Shown here piece after piece: positions 3,640 through 61,454 of a stretch of DNA of 64,000 nt; the first letter of the stretch is position 1, and each line of letters begins with the position of its first letter. Below the pieces are notes generated by a model, which saw only the letters and a program-made list of their open reading frames with translations, was not told the origin of the DNA and made no database searches. The stretch covers positions 64,384,320-64,448,319 of the forward strand of contig NC_083412.1 of assembly GCF_020745735.1 (NCBI RefSeq), read 5' to 3'. Made by a program: the position numbers and the translations under genes. This DNA comes from Hemiscyllium ocellatum (Eukaryota).

Positions 3640-3843
3640 CTGGAAGAAAGTGAGGGCTCCAGATGCTGGACAGTCAGAGTCGAAAAGGGTGGCTTTGGTA
3701 AAGCATAACAAGTCAGGCAGCATCCGAGGAGCAGGAAAACCACCAGGAATGAAGGGCTTATGCCCAAAACATTGGCTTTCCTGCTCCTTGGATGCTGCCT
3801 GGCCTGCTGTGCTGTTCCAGCGCCACACGTTTTGACCAAACAG
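3640..3843. mobile_element. Short palindromic PLE-derived element (family A)
   Basis: GGCAGCATCCGAGGAGCAGG and CCTGCTCCTTGGATGCTGCC inverted around a degenerate hammerhead core. Confidence 0.75.
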
Positions 3844-4299: not shown

Positions 4300-5625
4300 C
4301 AGGATAGAAATAAGAGTCACGTGGAAAAAGATGGGTTGATTAGGACGAGTTGGCATGGATTTCTAAAGGGGAAATCCTGTTTAAACTAAGTTGCTGGAGT
4401 TTTTTGAAGGTGTAACAGAAGGCCTTGATGGGGGTAACATTATTGCTGTGGTATGCCTGGTTTCCAAAGGCAGGGCCAGGTGACAGACCTAAGAGGAAAG
4501 TTATAAGTCATGGAATAAAAGGGACAGTAGCAGCATGGATACAAAACTGGCTGAGTGGTAGGAAACAGAGAATAATGGTCAATAGATATTCTTCAGGCTG
4601 GAGGAAGGTTTGGAGTGGTGTTCCCCCCAGGGTCGGTACTGGGACACTTGCTTTTCCTGATCATATATCCATGATCTGGATATTTCTTTGTAGGGGACAA
4701 TTTCAAAGTTGACAGATGACATTAAACTTGGAAAAGTTGTGTGGAGTTCCAGATGGACATTAATACGTTGGTGGTGGAGGTGGAGATGTGGCAGCTGACG
4801 TAGGTCAGAAGAACATTGAAAGACAACATTAATTAGGGTTACAATTCTGTAGGAAGAGAGGGCCCTGGTTATATATGTGCACAGATCTTTGAAGGTGACA
4901 GGCTAGATGGAGTGCATAATGCGTAAATCATACAGTATTCACAGCTTTATTAATAGAGGCAAAGAATATAAGAGCAGGAAGGTTATGTTGAACTTGCACA
5001 TAGACTTGATGGACCTCAGCCCAACTATTGTGTACAGTTGGGACTGTCGCATTACAGGAAAGATTAGATTAGGTTAGACTTACAGTGTGGAAACAGGCCC
5101 TTCGGCCCAACAAGTCCACACCAACCCGCAACCCACCCATACCCCTACATTTACCCCTTACCTAACACTACGGGCAATTTAGCTTGGCCAATTCACCTGA
5201 CCCGCACATCTTTGGCCTGTGGGAGGAAACCGGAGCACCCGGAGGAAACCCACGCAGACACGGGGAGAACGTGCAAACTCCACACAGTCAGTCGCCTGAG
5301 TCGAGAATTGAACCCGGGTCTACAGGCGCTGTGAGGCAGCAGTGCTAACCACTGTGCCACCGTGCCGCCCACAATGATGTGGGCGGCACGGTGGCACAGT
5401 TGCACAAAGATGTGAAGGCATTGGAGAGTGCAAAAGTGATTTACAAGAATGGCTCCAGAATGAGAAATGTCAGCTCTGAGGATAGATTGAAAATGTTGTG
5501 ACTATTCTCCCTGGAGACAAAAATACTGAGAGAAGATTTGACAGAGGTTTTCAAAATCAAGACTTGGCTTGGACAGAATAGACAGCGAGAAGCTGTGCTT
5601 CTGTAAAAGCAAAAGGAATGAGAGG
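4300..5625 (+). mobile_element. CR1 LINE ORF2 fragment, decayed, interrupted by HE1 SINE
   Basis: RT-like peptide HGIKGTVAAWIQNWLSGRKQR...SGVP; the sequence resumes after the SINE at AAAGATGTGAAGGCATTGG. Confidence 0.85.
5062..5370 (-). mobile_element. HE1-type V-SINE, full length, young
   Basis: tRNA-like head (TGGCACAGTGG A box, GGTTCAATTC B box), V-domain GTGTGGAGTTTGCACGTTCTCCCCGTG, CR1-like 3' end and (TCTAA)n tail; inserted in a CR1. Confidence 0.9.
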
Positions 5626-6596: not shown

Positions 6597-8377
6597 GATA
6601 TAGAGGCATTGGACAAACGTTGAAGGGGGCTTCACCTCACCACAGTATATAACTCATTGCCCTTTGGCTGCAAAGGCTGCAATCATGTAAAAGGTGAGAG
6701 AGTGCCTCTTCTCCAAGTTAATGACCTATTTAACTCACCCCTGTGTCCTCTTGAAAGTAAACCATTCCCCACCAACCTCACCCCCACTTATTCAGACCTG
6801 TGTTCCCAGCCTTAGCTGGGCTCCTCAGCCTGGCAGGTCTTCCCGTGTTCCCAACAGTGGTTACTCCCGAGTTGTTGGGAATCCAGCCTAGGGTTCCATC
6901 TGAAAGTCTAGCATTGGGCCCTTTGTCAATTAAAATTGCATTGTAACTTTTTCAAGTCTCTTTGTGAAATTGGTTCTCAAATGAATGCAGCATGGTCTAA
7001 ACATGTTGCAATTATGGTTGGTGAGTACACTGCAGCCAATGTGCTGATAAATTATTTGTACATACCTGAGGCAGGATTTTATAGACGGTGAAATTCCTGC
7101 CCCACCATCCAAAGACTCAATGGGCTTGCACCCTCCTATAGCACCACAGTTATTTAGCTGGTGATGCAAGTTTGTCCTTCATTTAGAATGAGGTCTTGCC
7201 TCAGAGAGCTGCTGGCCATTCTGCCCTAGTGACTGAGTCTGGGACTCCAAGCTGTCCTCAGATTCCACGTCCTTGAGCCCAGGACCACAGCAGGATAGGG
7301 GCTTCCGGTTTTGGGAGATGGAGAGAAGGGGCTGGGGGTCCAGTTCAAACAGCACACCATTGGGAAGGGAGAATGCCCCATGTGGAAAGGGGCAGTGAGG
7401 GAGCTCCTCACCTTACCAGCAAATCCCCAACTAGGGTGATCATCCTTCCAGCAGCTTCAAAATGAAAGGCAACCATAAAGCTGCTCTGAAATGCCAAACA
7501 TTTGGACACATAAGAACCTCAATTGGGGCAGGGGTGGGAGGACTGCCCAGAGCTTTTGCCACCCAAAATAAAATAGCAGACCTGTTGGTGGCAGGAGGGG
7601 GGAATGTGAAAAACCCAGAGAATTTCCCTGGCCTTCTCTCACCTATTGGCTAGAAACTGTAAAGTCCTGCCCCAACTATGGTGTCAAAAGGAGGAGTGGT
7701 GCAACTGGCTCCATGTTAAAACTAAGCCACTGCATGCATTTCTTTCTATGAGTGCATGCAGATTTAATTCAGGATTTCCACACTTTATTTCTATTTCACT
7801 TTTGGCTTCAGATTTGTTCTCCTGTAACACTTTGACTTAAATCTGGCCATTTTTCACAAACATAGGCAAAGATGAGAAATAAATGTGCACATACTATTGG
7901 AAATAATTAATGTTCAAGAGGTGAATTAAAGAAATCTTTTTAGATTAGAATGTACATATTGGCTTATAGTTGAACGATTCATTTATGTACAGACCTCAAC
8001 TGGCCTCAGTGATGCACACAGTCTTTGGTTCACTCAGGTGTCTGTTCTGGCTTTCCATCTTAATGTGAACATGTGATTGCAACGTTATTAGCATTAATCC
8101 CATGTGGACCAACAACGTGCTTTTGTAATATAAACAAAAACTGATGGACTTTGATCAAATTCAAGTGACTCATTCAATATTTGCAGTGGTACAGATTTTC
8201 AGTCAATTTGTTCTGATTTTAGCATTGTAGCAGAGCTGATGCAGTACTACAGTAATTTACAATATGTATTCTATATATAAATTAACCAGTGACATGAGAC
8301 TACCTTTGCGCTTTAACACATAGAACATAGAACATAGAACATCACTTCACATTGTTAACTGTTGGATTAAACATGAG

Positions 8378-9431
8378 AACGGTGGTCTGTTGTTTCGCCC
8401 TTAGGTCTCCAATGTAAAAGAGTTGACATTCTAACGGTTCTGTTCTCATAGTCCACATTTTATTAACATTTAGACATTAGTGCGTATAAATATATGCCTG
8501 TGTTTTACACATTCACACAAAACTCTGGGGGTATACCTGATCCCAAAGTAATGCATATAGAACCAATATGAGTAATAACACTAAACCTAATACCTCTAAA
8601 ATAAAATGAATGAAACCAGTACCGCTAAACAACAGCTAATCAAAATATTTAGATTAGATTAGACTTACAGTGTGGAAACAGGCCCTTCGGCCCAACAAGT
8701 CCACACCGACCCGCCGAAGCGCAACCCACCCATACCCCTACATTTACCCCTTACCTAACACTACGGGCAATTTAGCTTGGCCAATTCACCTGACCCGCAC
8801 ATCTTTGTGACTGTGGGAGGAAACCGGAGCACCCGGAGGAAACCCACGCAGACACGGGGAGAACGTGCAAACTCCACACAGTCAGTCGCCTGTAGACCCG
8901 GGTTCAATTCCCGACTCAGGCGACTGACTGTGTGGAGTTTGCACGTTCTCCCCGTGTCTGCGTGGGTTTCCTCCGGGTGCTCCGGTTTCCTCCCACAGTC
9001 ACAAAGATGTGCGAGTCAGGTGAATTGGCCAAGCTAAATTGCCCGTAGTGTTAGGTAAGGGGTAAATGTAGGGGTATGGGTGGGTTGCGCTTCGGCGGGT
9101 CGGTGTGGACTTGTTGGGCCGAAGGGCCTGTTTCCACACTGTAAGTCTAATCTAATCTAAATATTTTGATTAGCTGTTGTTTAGAGGTACTGGTTTCATT
9201 CATTTTATTTTAGAGGTATTAGGTTTAGTGTTATTACTCATATTGGTTCTATATGCATTACTTTGGGATCAGGTATACCCCCAGAGTTTTGTGTGAATGT
9301 GTAAAACACAGGCATATATTTATACGCACTAATGTCTAAATGTTAATAAAATGTGGACTATGAGAACAGAACCGTTAGAATGTCAACTCTTTTACATTGG
9401 AGACCTAAGGGCGAAACAACAGACCACCGTT
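8378..9431. repeat. 1,054-bp palindrome (515-bp inverted arms, 24-bp spacer)
   Basis: 8378-8892 is the reverse complement of 8917-9431 with 2 mismatches (9014, 9185). Each arm has about 245 bp of SINE plus about 270 bp of unique flank. Confidence 0.97.
8649..9160. mobile_element. Two head-to-head HE1 V-SINE copies forming the palindrome centre
   Basis: Minus copy about 8649-8892 and plus copy about 8887-9160; both lack the 5' about 40 nt. Confidence 0.9.
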
Positions 9432-9714: not shown

Positions 9715-10021
9715 TTAGATTAGATTACTTACAGTGTGGAAACATGTCCTTCAGCCCAACAAGTCCACACCGACCCTCTGAAGAGCAACCCACCCAGACC
9801 CATTCCCCTACATTTACCCCTTCACCTAACACTAAAGGCAATTTAGCATGGCCAATTCACCTAACCAGTTTTTTGGACTGTGGGAGGAAACCGGAACACC
9901 CGGAGAAAACCCATGCAGACACGGGGAGAATGACTGTGTGGAGTTTACACAATCACCTGAGGCAGGAATTGAACCCAGGTCTCTGGTGCTGTGAGGCAGC
10001 AGTGCTGACCACTGTGCTACC
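9715..10021 (-). mobile_element. HE1 V-SINE, older copy
   Basis: V-domain, tail and tRNA-like head with substitutions. Confidence 0.85.
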
Positions 10022-10519
10022 TACAAAAATTATTGGCTTAAATTGTAATCATAACTGATTCAATATTTATAACATTGCCATTTACCTTATTTCATGGATC
10101 AAAATTGGAATTAATACCATATTCAACACTGATCAGTATCAAGAAAATATTAATAGAATATTTATTAAGAACTCAAACAATTTTGTGCTTGTAAATGTGA
10201 CAGTATGGTCGTGTTTTAATGAATAAAAGACACATTATGTTTGCTTCAGTAGCAAAAGTAAAATATATTGGCCTTTTGCACACCATGTGCTTGCAACACA
10301 GTTTAGCTAGTGAAAAGTGCTATTATTGCTCTGCCCAATGTTTGAAAGGGATTCTAAAATGATATTTTTCAATTCCTTTCTATTTTGTCTATGATATCTA
10401 GATACAATATGTTAGTTTATTGGCATCATATGTTCAAAGTCTATTTTATTGCATAATTTAACGAGCGACTCTTGGGGTTTTCTAGTATCGGCTTCTAAAT
10501 GTTTTGCAGAATTCACATG

Positions 10520-15417: not shown

Positions 15418-16688
15418 CCCGAAAATGTGTCGCTGGAAAAGCGCAGCAGGTCAGGCAGCATCCAAGGAGCAGGTGAATCGACGTTTCGGGCATAAGCCCT
15501 TCTTCAGGAATGAGGAGAGTGTGCTAAGCAGGCTAAGATAAAAGGCAGGGAGGAGGGACTTGGGGGAGGGGTGTTGGAAATGCGATAGATGGAAGGAGGT
15601 TAAGGTGAGGGTGATAGGCCGGAGTGGGGGTGGGGGCGGAGAGGTCAGGAAGAAGATTGCAGGTTAGGGAGGTGGTGCTGAGTTCGAGGGTTGGGACTGA
15701 GACAGTGTAGGGGGAGGGGAAATGAGGAAACTGGAGAAATCTGAGTTCGTCCCTTGTGGTTGGAGGGTTCCTAAGTGGAAGATGAGGCGCTCTTCCTCTA
15801 GCCATCGTGTTGCTACAGTCTGGTGATGGAGGAGTCCAAGGACCTGCATGTCCTTGGTGGAGTGGGAGGGGGAGTTGAAGTGTTGAGCCATGGGGTGGTT
15901 GGGTTGATTGGGCTGGGTATCCCAGAGGTGTTCTCTGAAACGTTCCGCAAGTAGGTGGCCTGTCTCCCCAATATAGAGGAGGCCACATCGGGTGCAATGG
16001 ATGCAGTAAATGATGTGTGTGGAGGTGCAGGTGAATTTGTGGCGGATATGGAAGGATCCCTTGGGGCCTTGGAGGGAAGTAAGGGGGGAGGTGTGAGCAC
16101 AAGTTTTGCATTTCTTTCGGTTGCAGGGGAAGTTGTCAGGAATGGAGGTTGGGTTGGTGAGGGGTGTGGACCTGACAAGGGAGTCACGGAGGGAGTGGTC
16201 TTTTCGGAATGCTGATAGGGGAGGGAGGGAAATATATCCCTGGTGGTGGGGTCCGTTTGGAGGTGGCGGAAATGACGATGGATGATATGATGTATATGGA
16301 GGTTGGTGGGGTGGTAGGTGAGGACCAGTGGGGTTCTGTCCAGGACATTTCCCCTCCCCCCACCTTGTCTCAGTCCCAACCCTCGAACTCAGCACCACCT
16401 TCCTAACCTGCAATCTTCTTCCTGACCTCTCCGCCCCCACCCCCACTCCGGCCTATCACCCTCACCTTAACCTCCTTCCATCTATCGCATTTCCAACGCC
16501 CCTCCCCCAAGTCCCTCCTCCCTACCTTTTATCTCAGCCTGTTTGGCACACTCTCCTCATTCCTGAAGAAGGGCTCATGCCCGAAACGTCGATTCTCCTG
16601 CTCCTTGGATGCTGCCTGACCTGCTGTGCTTTTCCAGCGGCACATTTTCGGCTCTGGTCTCCAGCATTTGCAGTCCTCACTTTCTCCT
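15418..16688 (-). mobile_element. Penelope-like element: 5'-truncated GIY-YIG region (-) with inverted terminal copy (+), 14-bp TSD
   Basis: IIYCIHCTRCGLLYIGETG (GIY-YIG), CNRKKCKTC and RTPLVLTYHP (frameshifted). Inverted arms 15419-15725 and 16346-16651; ATGAGAATGTAGGA duplicated at 15404-15417 and 16689-16702. Confidence 0.92.
16563..16590 (+). ncRNA. Minimal hammerhead ribozyme-like motif in PLE terminal repeat
   Basis: CTGAAGA-A-GGGC(tcat)GCCC-GAAAC-GTC. Mirror copy at 15480-15507 (-); degenerate copies near 3750, 11230, 24973 and 51552. PLE termini are known to carry such motifs. Confidence 0.55.
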
Positions 16689-19015: not shown

Positions 19016-19327
19016 ATTAGATTAGACTTACAGTGTGGAAACAGGCCCTTCGGCCCAACAAGTCCACACCGACCCGCCGAAGCGCAACCCACCCATACCC
19101 CTACATTTACCCCTTACCTAACACTATGGGCAATTTAGCTTGGCCAATTCACCTGACCAGCACATCTTTGTGACTGTGGGAGGAAACCGGAGCACCCGGA
19201 GGAAACCCACGCAGACACGGGGAGAACGTGCAAACTCCACACAGTCAGTCGCCTGAGTCGGGAATTGAACCCGGGTCTACAGGCGCTGTGAGGCAGCAGT
19301 GCTAACCACTGTGCCACCGTGCCGCCC
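19016..19327 (-). mobile_element. HE1 V-SINE, full length, young
   Basis: Nearly identical to the 5062-5370 copy. Confidence 0.9.
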
Positions 19328-19504: not shown

Positions 19505-19740
19505 ACAACTGCAGATACTGTAGGTCTGAAAAACCCAAGAACAGAAATTGATGAAGACACTTAGCAGGCCTGACAGTATCAGTGGAGAGAAAACAGAGTT
19601 AACATTTCGATCCCAATGAATCTTCTTCAGATTCATCTGAAGAAGGGTCACTGGACACAAAACATTAACTCTGTTTTCTCTTCACAGATGCTGCCATCTG
19701 ATTTTCTGATTTTCTTCAACAATTTCCCTTTTTGTATGTT
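19505..19740. mobile_element. Short palindromic PLE-like element (family B)
   Basis: Inverted arms centred on CTTCTTCAGA-TTCA-TCTGAAGAAG. Related arms at about 5640-5750, 26850-27000 and 37880-38000. Confidence 0.65.
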
Positions 19741-48454: not shown

Positions 48455-49997
48455 CACAGAGGTGGCTGAGGAAATAGCGGATGCATTGGTTGAGATCTTT
48501 CAAAAGTCACTGGAGTCAGGGAAAGTCCCGGATGATTGGAAGATCGCTGTTGTAACACCCTTGTTCAAGAAAGGATCAAGACAAAAGAAGGAAAATTATA
48601 GGCCAATTAGCCTAACCTCGGTTGTTGGTAAAATTCTAGAATCCATCATTAAGGATGAGGTTTCTAAATTCTTAGAAGAGCAGAGTCTGATTAGAACAAG
48701 TCAACGTGGATTTAGTAAGGGGAGGTCATGCCTGACAAACCTGTTGGAATTCTTTGAAGAGGTGACAAGTAGGTTAGACCAGGGAAATCCAGTGGATGTG
48801 GTCTATCTAGACTTCCAAAAGGCCTTTGACAAGGTGCCACACGGGAGGCTGCTGAGCAAGGTAAGGGCCCAGGGTGTTCAAGATGAGCTACTGGGATGGA
48901 TTGAGGATTGGCTGTCTTACAGAAGGCAGAGAGTTGGGATAAAAGGTTTTTTTTTGGAATGGCAGCCGGTGACGAGAGGTGTCCGCAGGGTTCAGTGTTG
49001 GGGCCACAGCTGTTTGCATTATATATTAATGATCTGGATGAAGGGACTGGGGGCATTCTAGCAAAGTTTGCAGGTGATACGAAGTTAGGTGGACAGGCAG
49101 GTAGTACTGAGGAAGTGGGCAGGCTACAGAAGGATTTGGACAGTTTGGGAGAGTGGTCCAGGAAATGTCTGATGGAATTCAACGTGAGCAAATGCAAGGT
49201 CTTGCACTTTGGCAAAAAGAATAAAAGCATAGACTACTTTCTAAATGGTGAGAAAATTTGTAAAGTCAAAGTACAAAGGGATCTGGGAGTGCTAGTCGAA
49301 GATTCTGTGAAGGCAAACATGCAGGTTGAGTCCGTGATTAAGAAAGCGAATGCAATGTTGTCACTTATCTCAAGAGGGTTGGAATATAAAAGCACCGTTG
49401 TGCTACTGAGACTTTATAAAGCTCTGGTTAGGCCCCATTTGGAATACTGTGTCCAGTTTTGGTCCTCACACCTCAGGAAGGACATGCTGGCACTGGAACG
49501 TGTCTAGCGGAGATTCACACAGATGATCCCTGGAATGGTACGTCTAACATATGAGGAACGGCTGAGGATCCTGCGATTGTATTCATTGGAGTTTAGAAGA
49601 TTAAGGGGAGACTTAATACAGACGTACAAGATAATACATGGCTTGGAAAGGGTGGACGCCAGGAAATTGTTTCCGTTAGGCGAGGTGACTAGGACCCGTG
49701 GACACAGCCTTAAAATTAGTGGGGGTCAATTCAGAACAGAAATGTGGAGACATTTCTTCAGCCAAAGAGTGGAGGGCCTGTGGAATTCATTGCTACAGAG
49801 TGCAGTGGAGGCCGGGACGCTAAATGTCTTCAAGGCAGAGATTGATAGATTCTTGTTGTCTCGAGGAATTAAGGGCTAGGGGGAGAATGCGGGTAAGTGG
49901 AGTTGAAATGCCCATCAGCCATGATTGAATGGCGGAGTGGACTCGATGGGCCGAATGGCCTTACTTCCACTCCTATGTCTTATGGTCTTATGGTCTT
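48455..49997 (+). mobile_element. Young 5'-truncated CR1 LINE, 1.5 kb, ORF2 RT domain to 3' end
   Basis: NYRPISLTSVVGKILE, YLDFQKAFDKVPH, KFAGDTKLGG, LVRPHLEYCVQFW; frameshifts near 48950-48990 and a stop near 49505. 3' hairpin GGAGTGGA..TCCACTCC and (ATGGTCTT)n tail. Confidence 0.95.
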
Positions 49998-51459: not shown

Positions 51460-51640
51460 TGGGTACTGCAGATGCTGGAGATTAAAGTCAAGATTAGAGT
51501 GGTGCTGGAAAAGCACAGCAGGTCAGGCAGCATCCAAGGAGCAGGAAAATTCCTGATGAAGAGCTTTTGCCCAAAATATAGATTTTTCCTGCTCCTCGGA
51601 TGCTGCCGGAACTGCTGTGCTTTTCCAGCACCACTCTAAT
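51460..51640. mobile_element. Short palindromic PLE-derived element (family A)
   Basis: About 58-bp inverted arms (ATTAGAGTGGTGCTGGAAAAGCACAGC / GCTGTGCTTTTCCAGCACCACTCTAAT) around CCTGATGAAG...CCCAAAA. Confidence 0.8.
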
Positions 51641-61149: not shown

Positions 61150-61454
61150 GGGTGTCACGGTGGCACAGTGGTTAGCACTGCTGCCTCACAGCACCTGAGA
61201 CCCGGGTTCAATTCCCGACTCAGGCGACTGACTGTGTGGAGTTTGCACGTTCTCCCCGTGTCTGTGTGGGTTTCCTCCGGGTGCTCCGGTTTCCTCCCAC
61301 AGTCCAAAGATGTGCGGGTCAGGTGAATTGGCCATGCTAAATTGTCCATAGTGTTAGGTAAATGTAGGGGTATGGGTGGGTTGCGCTTCGGCGGGTCGGT
61401 GTGGACTTGTTGGGCCGAAGGGCCTGTTTCCACACTGTAAGTAATCTAATCTAA
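61150..61454 (+). mobile_element. HE1 V-SINE, full length
   Basis: Head, V-domain, TAATCTAATCTAA tail. Confidence 0.9.

What the first reader, a model, noticed from the sequence alone, without database searches (positions are those of the whole stretch)
8378..9431. 1-kb near-perfect palindrome that turns around on a hairpin built into the young HE1 SINE
Seen: 515-bp arms with 2 mismatches, including about 270 bp of unique flank, so this is not two independent SINE insertions. The 24-nt spacer (tagacccgggttcaattcccgact, the tRNA T-arm) lies between CGCCTG and CAGGCG. These form a 6-bp inverted repeat in intact young copies (19016-19327; 5062-5370 has the same stem) but not in old copies (24311, 42193). 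The SINE 5' about 40 nt is gone. Inference: a strand folded back at this SINE-encoded stem and self-primed, copying the right flank in reverse. If so, this SINE subfamily could seed fold-back duplications genome-wide.
Basis: partly seen in the sequence, partly recalled or inferred. Interest (0 to 1): 0.72.

Follow-up and report, generated by a model that had tools for sequence, protein, structure and literature searches.

The report
SINE snap-back palindrome with copied flank
A 1-kb mirror-image repeat in this shark sequence is real and is most likely a known copying accident: as a short jumping element (SINE) inserted, its new DNA copy folded back on a small hairpin and copied itself plus 271 bases of neighbouring DNA.

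Summary
The arms 8378-8892 and 8917-9431 (515 nt) differ by two substitutions and flank a 24-nt spacer. The innermost 6 bp of the left arm (CGCCTG) are native SINE sequence, so the turn sits on a pre-existing 6-bp inverted repeat. The right arm is the original: a SINE lacking its first 42 nt, its (TCTAA)3 tail and 271 bp of downstream DNA. The left arm is the backward copy.

This is the geometry expected from snap-back during target-primed reverse transcription. The cDNA stops at SINE nt 43, its last six bases pair with itself, and synthesis runs back along the cDNA into the target strand it is attached to. Three features fit: the missing SINE head, the copied flank lying on the tail side, and no substitutions shared by both arms.

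A second young HE1 copy (5351-5400) carries a perfect 23-nt snap-back of its own 5' end. These two are the only perfect short-loop hairpins in the 64 kb. Snap-back junctions are published for R2 and L1.

The idea that resident SINE copies seed fold-backs genome-wide is not supported.

An assembly artefact (about 10%) and a later repair or replication fold-back (about 20%) remain open.

The parts
8378..8648 (-). Left arm, outer part: inverted copy of the 271-bp downstream flank (9161-9431)
   Evidence: complementary to 9161-9431 with one mismatch (8624 versus 9185). No other copy in the window.
8649..8886 (-). Left arm, inner part: inverted copy of the SINE body and (TCTAA)3 tail (SINE nt 79 to the end)
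   Evidence: 99.6% identity to the right-arm SINE. TTAGA x3 at 8649-8663 mirrors TCTAA x3 at 9146-9160.
8887..8892 (+). CGCCTG: native SINE nt 43-48, the 5' half of the 6-bp stem. This is the microhomology at the turn and the point where the SINE is 5'-truncated.
   Evidence: the same 6-mer sits in the same place in the intact copies 19016-19327 and 5062-5373. Upstream of it the sequence stops matching the SINE.
8893..8916 (+). 24-nt spacer: native SINE nt 49-72 in sense orientation, containing the B-box-like GGTTCAATTCC with its own small stem
   Evidence: identical to copy 19016. On the cDNA strand the 36-mer folds as a two-tier hairpin at -9.2 kcal/mol, z -3.5.
8917..9160 (+). Right arm, inner part: the original 5'-truncated HE1-type SINE body (from CAGGCG, nt 73) with the (TCTAA)3 tail
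   Evidence: 98.5% identity to copy 19016 and contiguous with the spacer in sense orientation. One private substitution at 9014.
9161..9431 (+). Right arm, outer part: the original downstream target DNA that served as template for 8378-8648
   Evidence: continuous with unique sequence beyond 9431. Copying stopped at 9431.
8377..8378 (.). Left junction: the end of the backward copy joined to upstream DNA, with no microhomology
   Evidence: complementarity ends here, and the first outward base pair does not match.

Best explanation
This is an insertion-coupled snap-back.

Proposed sequence of events:
1. A LINE-encoded endonuclease/reverse transcriptase nicked the bottom strand at about 9160/9161 and reverse-transcribed an HE1-type SINE RNA from its (TCTAA)n tail.
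2. Synthesis left the RNA at SINE nt 43, just after copying the extended B-box hairpin.
3. The last six cDNA bases (CAGGCG) paired with the CGCCTG the cDNA had made 24 nt earlier.
4. That 3' end primed DNA-templated synthesis back along the cDNA, across the tail, and 271 nt into the bottom strand of the downstream target DNA to which the cDNA is covalently attached.
5. The new 3' end was then joined without microhomology to the upstream target end (8377). The opposite strand was filled in, fixing a 1,054-bp palindrome.

Shown by the sequence: the geometry, the 6-bp microhomology, which arm is the original, the 5' truncation at the turn, and the copied flank lying on the tail side.

Inferred: that the event happened during insertion, that nt 43 was the stopping point of reverse transcription, and which polymerase made the backward copy (the LINE enzyme or a host repair polymerase).
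For: 1. The geometry is exactly that predicted. The bottom strand reads as one continuous product: flank, cDNA, loop, sense copy of the SINE, sense copy of the flank.
2. The SINE lacks nt 1-42, and no orphan head exists nearby. A cDNA that never reached the 5' end explains this without a second event.
3. The copied host DNA lies on the SINE's 3'-tail side. That is the only side covalently joined to the cDNA.
4. There is a 6-bp native microhomology at the turn. The cDNA-strand hairpin is stable at -9.2 kcal/mol, z -3.5.
5. No substitutions are shared by both arms relative to the youngest subfamily. The one SINE mismatch is private to the right, original arm. The palindrome is therefore not detectably younger than the insertion.
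6. Another young HE1 copy carries a perfect 23-nt inverted copy of its own first bases with a 4-nt loop exactly at its 5' end (5351-5400). This and the 1-kb palindrome are the only perfect hairpin repeats (arm 12 nt or more, loop 30 nt or less) in 64 kb.
7. Published precedents:
- R2 insertions show snap-back synthesis from the cDNA 3' end. It is mostly templated by the cDNA and sometimes by nearby target DNA, and is followed by joining to upstream DNA (PMC11204384; PMC12222951).
- L1 insertions occur with local inverted duplications made by self-annealed 3' ends (bioRxiv 10.1101/2024.12.14.628481).
- L1 ORF2p extends primers as short as 5 nt and a hairpin with a 7-nt duplex, and it has DNA-templated activity (PMC10830420).
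8. Unchecked leads from this scan describe CR1 snap-back palindromes in the same genome, one with 128 bp of copied flank.
Against: - No empty-site or orthologous sequence was available, so it is not shown that 8377 and 9161 were neighbours before the event.
- No convincing target-site duplication is visible.
- The age test has little power. About 0.5 shared substitutions would be expected even if the palindrome formed halfway through the SINE's life.
- Copying 271 nt of duplex target DNA needs strand displacement or prior resection. Neither has been shown for the partner LINE enzyme.
- Earlier notes, unchecked, also report retroelement-independent fold-back duplications of similar size in this genome.
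Confidence: 0.6

Rival explanations
1. Post-insertion fold-back. A resident full-length SINE suffered a double-strand break or a stalled fork near nt 42. A 3' strand annealed at the 6-bp inverted repeat and primed 509 nt of backward synthesis. It was then rejoined to the left side with loss of the SINE head, and possibly of more DNA. This is closest to what the first reader proposed.
For: - The same 6-bp microhomology and arm geometry fit this model.
- Blunt joining at 8377/8378 is compatible with end joining.
- Fold-back inverted duplications from self-annealed 3' ends are an established repair outcome (cited).
- Earlier notes, unchecked, report an 817-bp retroelement-independent example in this genome.
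Against: - It needs an extra deletion of at least 42 bp that happens to remove exactly the SINE head.
- It gives no reason for the apex to lie in one of the youngest SINE copies, which make up roughly 1% of the window, or for the arms to lie on the tail side.
- A 6-bp stem with a 24-nt spacer is a weak structure in duplex or lagging-strand DNA compared with the 60-nt hairpins elsewhere in the window.
- The two other copies with the same stem are intact.
- No substitutions are shared by both arms.
Confidence: 0.2
2. Read or assembly artefact. An in-vitro fold-back at the same short inverted repeat during long-read library preparation produced a chimeric molecule whose overhang was built into the contig.
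For: - Short inverted repeats also guide in-vitro fold-back priming.
- If this is the epaulette shark reference (earlier notes only), the assembly is TrioCanu on about 50x continuous long reads with arrow and linked-read polishing, not HiFi (PMC10587355).
- No reads could be inspected.
Against: - The palindrome is internal. There are no N in the window and ordinary sequence continues for 8.3 kb on the left and 54 kb on the right.
- A fold-back read would be palindromic to its end, not for 515 nt.
- The centre is native SINE sequence, not an adapter.
- The arms are of equal length with two substitutions and no indels. That is unlike raw long-read error and unlike two strands of one molecule.
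- The true SINE head would still have to be missing.
Confidence: 0.1
3. Two cDNAs primed from both nicks (as proposed for Penelope-like head-to-head dimers) or twin priming produced the head-to-head SINE pair.
For: - Tail-out, head-to-head SINE halves fit this model.
- The 3' ends of two such cDNAs, stopping at nt 43 and nt 73, would be complementary over the same 6 bp.
Against: Neither process duplicates host DNA. The 271-bp inverted copy of the downstream flank (one mismatch) would require the target to have been a perfect palindrome hit exactly at its centre.
Confidence: 0.03

Closest known systems
Snap-back 5' junctions of R2 retrotransposon (PRINT) insertions in human cells (PMC11204384; PMC12222951)
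   Same: The cDNA 3' end primes extra synthesis before the 5' junction forms. The template is usually the cDNA itself and sometimes nearby target DNA. The product is then joined to upstream DNA.
   Different: Those are engineered, site-specific R2 events seen as junction reads. This one is an inherited genomic copy of a SINE mobilised in trans by a CR1-type LINE. Its backward copy is 509 nt long and runs 271 nt into host DNA.
L1 insertions with local inverted duplications or fold-backs (bioRxiv 10.1101/2024.12.14.628481)
   Same: [quoted passage not shown]
   Different: The published inverted duplications lie mostly on the reciprocal (non-cDNA) end with 2-bp microhomology, in cancer or cell-line genomes. 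Here the primary cDNA end itself folds, on a 6-bp stem encoded by the element.
Double-strand-break or replication fold-back inverted duplications at short inverted repeats
   Same: A short inverted repeat sits at the apex, and the arms are near-identical with a spacer equal to the loop.
   Different: Those events are independent of retroelements and usually give large or terminal duplications. Here the apex coincides with the 5'-truncation point of a young SINE, and the arms lie on its tail side.
L1 twin priming and Penelope-like head-to-head insertions
   Same: Inverted retroelement segments are made during a single insertion.
   Different: Those produce inverted or duplicated element sequence only, not an inverted copy of flanking host DNA.

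Membership tests
HE1-type V-SINE (tRNA-derived, partner LINE HER1; PMC3747384) | tRNA-like head with A-box and B-box | tested here: inconclusive
   Intact copies carry TGGCACAGTGG and GGTTCAATTCC at the expected spacing. ARAGORN and Rfam call nothing. The motif assignment rests on established pol III box consensus sequences.
HE1-type V-SINE (tRNA-derived, partner LINE HER1; PMC3747384) | Sequence match to published HE1 and a 3' tail shared with the HER1 LINE | not tested
No reference HE1 or HER1 sequence was available. About nine related copies with (TCTAA)n tails are in the window. No LINE with that tail was seen.
Snap-back by-product of target-primed reverse transcription | [quoted passage not shown] | tested here: met
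   The left arm begins at the SINE truncation point (nt 43-48) and is the reverse complement of SINE nt 73 to the end.
Snap-back by-product of target-primed reverse transcription | Any host DNA copied is the DNA attached to the cDNA, that is, downstream of the element's 3' tail | tested here: met
   The copied 271 bp directly follow the (TCTAA)3 tail.
Snap-back by-product of target-primed reverse transcription | Short terminal self-complementarity at the turn | tested here: met
   A 6-bp native inverted repeat. The cDNA-strand hairpin folds at -9.2 kcal/mol.
Snap-back by-product of target-primed reverse transcription | Formed in the same event as the insertion (the empty site joins upstream and downstream flanks directly) | not testable with these tools
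   No orthologous or allelic sequence was obtainable. The indirect age test is only compatible (0 shared substitutions and 1 private one in the SINE).
Break- or replication-driven fold-back inverted duplication | The element was intact before the event, and the rearrangement is independent of retrotransposition | tested here: inconclusive
   The SINE head nt 1-42 is absent with no remnant, so this model needs an added deletion. No pre-event state was available.
Long-read fold-back chimera or assembly artefact | Arms identical, palindrome reaching a read or contig end or a gap, or an adapter at the centre | tested here: not met
   Two substitutions between the arms, no N in the window, flanks continuing on both sides, and native SINE sequence at the centre.
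Long-read fold-back chimera or assembly artefact | No independent molecules span the junctions | not testable with these tools

The most novel reading that the evidence does not exclude
The extended B-box hairpin of the youngest HE1 subfamily is a recurrent snap-back hotspot. New insertions of this subfamily would then repeatedly create kilobase palindromes that include host DNA. These would be a SINE-specific source of inverted duplications and, if transcribed, of long hairpin RNAs against the SINE itself.
Probability: 0.1. Interest if true: 0.6.

Novelty: new member of a known kind. Interest (0 to 1): 0.35.

Why it matters
If confirmed by reads and an empty site, this is a clean inherited example of snap-back synthesis by a CR1-type LINE machinery acting on a SINE, and the backward copy runs 271 nt into host DNA.

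It would show that an accident so far documented mainly in engineered R2 and L1 systems and in cancer genomes also leaves fixed scars in a vertebrate germ line. It would also show that such an event can duplicate host sequence in inverted orientation.

Two practical cautions follow:
- Near-perfect palindromes at the 5' ends of retroelements should not be read as genome-instability hotspots without checking the insertion-coupled explanation.
- Such palindromes should not be dismissed as assembly artefacts without that check either.

No function is suggested.

Tried and rejected
- **Read support.** I did not send that stretch to any public-collection search, and I did not use read laying. Read support is therefore untested.
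- **RNA gene calls.** Rfam and ARAGORN gave no calls on the SINE heads.
- **Paralogous flanks.** I searched for paralogous copies of the flanks to reconstruct the pre-insertion site. The flanks are unique in the window.
- **Target-site duplication.** Only weak 5-7-nt resemblances appear at this and other copies. They are confounded by the (TCTAA)n tail.
- **Dating.** Two differences in 515 nt give about 2.8 million generations. This uses the published epaulette shark rate of 7e-10 and assumes that species identity. The Poisson range is tenfold and the result does not separate the models. With pi = 0.002, polishing across haplotypes could also explain a mismatch.
- **Assembly type.** I had recalled the assembly as HiFi-based. 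The paper shows continuous long reads with TrioCanu. I dropped the argument that consensus accuracy alone proves the mismatches real.
- **Twin or dual priming.** Rejected because host flank is duplicated.
- **Missed SMRTbell adapter.** Rejected because the centre is native SINE sequence.
- **Window context.** It holds only decayed retroelement ORFs: a reverse transcriptase at about 48.4-49.5 kb and a weak GIY-YIG match at about 16 kb.

Full report
**Observation**

The palindrome is in the sequence exactly as described. The arms 8378-8892 and 8917-9431 are 515 nt each and are separated by the 24-nt spacer at 8893-8916. A direct comparison finds two substitutions (8624/9185 and 8795/9014) and no indels. 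Complementarity ends abruptly at both outer edges.

Each arm consists of 244 nt of a SINE and 271 nt of DNA with no other copy in the window. Two independent SINE insertions are excluded. It is the only long palindrome in the 64 kb.

**Anatomy**

I aligned the centre with seven other copies of the SINE in the window. The spacer is native SINE sequence in sense orientation. It is contiguous on its right with the SINE body (8917-9160), which ends in (TCTAA)3, and then with unique DNA. The right arm is therefore the original and the left arm is the backward copy.

On the left of the spacer, native SINE sequence continues for exactly six bases (CGCCTG, SINE nt 43-48). After that the sequence follows the reverse complement of the right arm instead of the SINE. 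The intact young copies at 19016-19327 and 5062-5373 both carry CGCCTG-[24 nt]-CAGGCG. The turn therefore sits on a pre-existing 6-bp inverted repeat, a microhomology expected by chance at about 4^-6.

SINE nt 1-42 are missing, and no orphan head lies anywhere near.

The intermediate copy at 61155, however, has an equivalent 6-bp stem in a shifted register (CCTGAG/CTCAGG).

On the cDNA strand the 36-mer folds as a two-tier hairpin: the outer 6-bp stem plus the small stem around the B-box-like loop. Its energy is -9.2 kcal/mol with z -3.5. In the SINE RNA the same region is a stable extended hairpin. The element contains 11 perfect inverted repeats of 6 bp or more, and four of them have loops of 30 nt or less. 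This stem is therefore a good site for a turn but not a unique one.

**What it most likely is**

Read along the bottom strand, the structure is one continuous synthesis product:
- downstream target DNA;
- antisense SINE from the tail up to nt 43;
- the loop;
- sense SINE back to the tail;
- a sense copy of 271 nt of the downstream target.

This is what target-primed reverse transcription followed by snap-back would give. The cDNA is covalently attached to the bottom strand downstream of the element's tail. If its 3' end pairs with itself, extension copies the cDNA first and then the DNA the cDNA is attached to.

The model explains three features without extra events:
- the SINE head is absent because it was never reverse-transcribed;
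- the copied host DNA lies on the tail side;
- the apex coincides with the 5' truncation point.

Relative to the youngest subfamily, the two arms share no derived substitutions. The one SINE mismatch (9014) is private to the right arm, and the left arm keeps the consensus base. The palindrome is therefore not detectably younger than the insertion. The power of this test is low.

**A second case in the same window**

The young copy at 5062-5373 is full length. Immediately upstream of its first base it carries a perfect 23-nt inverted copy of its own 5' end with a 4-nt loop (5351-5400).

I exhaustively scanned the window for perfect hairpin repeats with arms of 12 nt or more, loops of 30 nt or less, and no low-complexity sequence. 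Only this one and the 1-kb palindrome were found. Both sit at the 5' end of one of the three youngest copies of the SINE.

A short inverted copy made from the element's own first bases, exactly at its boundary, is hard to explain except as cDNA self-priming at insertion. It shows that the machinery moving this SINE does snap back. It also shows that the turn is not tied to the B-box stem.

**Comparison with what is known**

- HE1 is listed as a tRNA-derived V-SINE of sharks and rays with the partner LINE HER1 (PMC3747384).
- For R2, whole-genome sequencing of insertions shows a "snap-back" class. In it the cDNA 3' end primes additional synthesis, mostly on the cDNA and sometimes on nearby target DNA, and is then joined to upstream DNA (PMC11204384). 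The same class was seen again with long reads (PMC12222951).
- For L1, insertions with local inverted duplications made by self-annealed, extended 3' ends are described in clones and in cancer genomes (bioRxiv 10.1101/2024.12.14.628481).
- Purified ORF2p extends primers as short as 5 nt and a hairpin with a 7-nt duplex, and it has DNA-templated activity (PMC10830420).
- Earlier notes of this scan are unchecked by me and serve as leads only. They describe CR1 snap-back palindromes in the same genome, one with 128 bp of copied flank said to be read-supported. They also describe head-to-head HE1 dimers with other spacers.
- The same notes report retroelement-independent fold-back duplications of similar size. 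This keeps the repair rival alive.

**Rivals**

*Later break- or replication-driven fold-back in a resident SINE (about 0.2).* It fits the microhomology. It needs an added deletion that removes exactly the SINE head. It offers no reason for the apex to lie in one of the youngest copies or for the arms to lie on the tail side. It also relies on a weak stem in a duplex context, and the two other copies with that stem are intact.

*Read or assembly artefact (about 0.1).* If the genome is the epaulette shark reference, as earlier notes say, the assembly is TrioCanu on continuous long reads with arrow and linked-read polishing (PMC10587355). My initial recollection of a HiFi assembly was wrong, and consensus accuracy alone cannot carry the argument. 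Several features still argue against a chimeric read:
- the palindrome is internal, with no N in the window and long ordinary flanks;
- the centre is native SINE sequence and not an adapter;
- the arms are of equal length, with substitutions but no indels;
- the true SINE head would still be missing.

*Dual or twin priming.* Rejected because host DNA is duplicated.

**What could not be done**

No read-level or orthologous evidence was obtained. No convincing target-site duplication could be defined.

**Verdict**

- The event is best placed during the SINE's insertion, as a snap-back of the nascent cDNA. This is a known kind of accident.
- The suggestion that resident copies of this subfamily seed fold-backs across the genome is not supported by what is in the window.
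- This is a new natural member of a known kind and of moderate interest. Its main value is as a clean germ-line example in which the backward copy runs well into host DNA.

Noticed in passing
window 5351-5400: A perfect 23-nt inverted repeat with a 4-nt loop lies exactly at the 5' end of the full-length young HE1 copy 5062-5373 (minus strand). It is a short snap-back copy of the SINE's own first bases. With the 1-kb palindrome it is the only perfect short-loop hairpin repeat in the 64 kb.
   Followed up: yes
window about 9930-9950, within the HE1 copy 9715-10025 (minus strand): This older SINE copy, 280 bp right of the palindrome, has a 21-nt segment just downstream of the B-box (consensus TGACTGTGTGGAGTTTGCACG) replaced in place by its reverse complement. 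This is a micro-inversion of unknown origin.
   Followed up: partly
window 8318-8342: An (ACATAGA)3.6 microsatellite lies 35 bp left of the palindrome junction. It is possibly the tail of another LINE-type insertion.
   Followed up: no
window 51493-51640, 3679-3836, 19571-19696: Three imperfect hairpin repeats have 60-64-nt arms (79-93% complementary) and 2-30-nt spacers. Earlier notes on this genome describe Penelope-like mini-palindromes of this size.
   Followed up: no
window 48462-49507 (+) and 15664-16446 (-): These are decayed retroelement ORFs. The first is a reverse transcriptase domain split over two frames (RVT_1, E 6e-17 and 4e-8). The second is a sub-threshold GIY-YIG match that may belong to a Penelope-like element.
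   Followed up: partly
window 61186-61227 versus 19250-19285: A single T insertion in the youngest SINE subfamily (TG-AGA to TGTAGA) shifts the 6-bp stem around the B-box from CCTGAG/CTCAGG to CGCCTG/CAGGCG. The stem is kept in a new register.
   Followed up: partly
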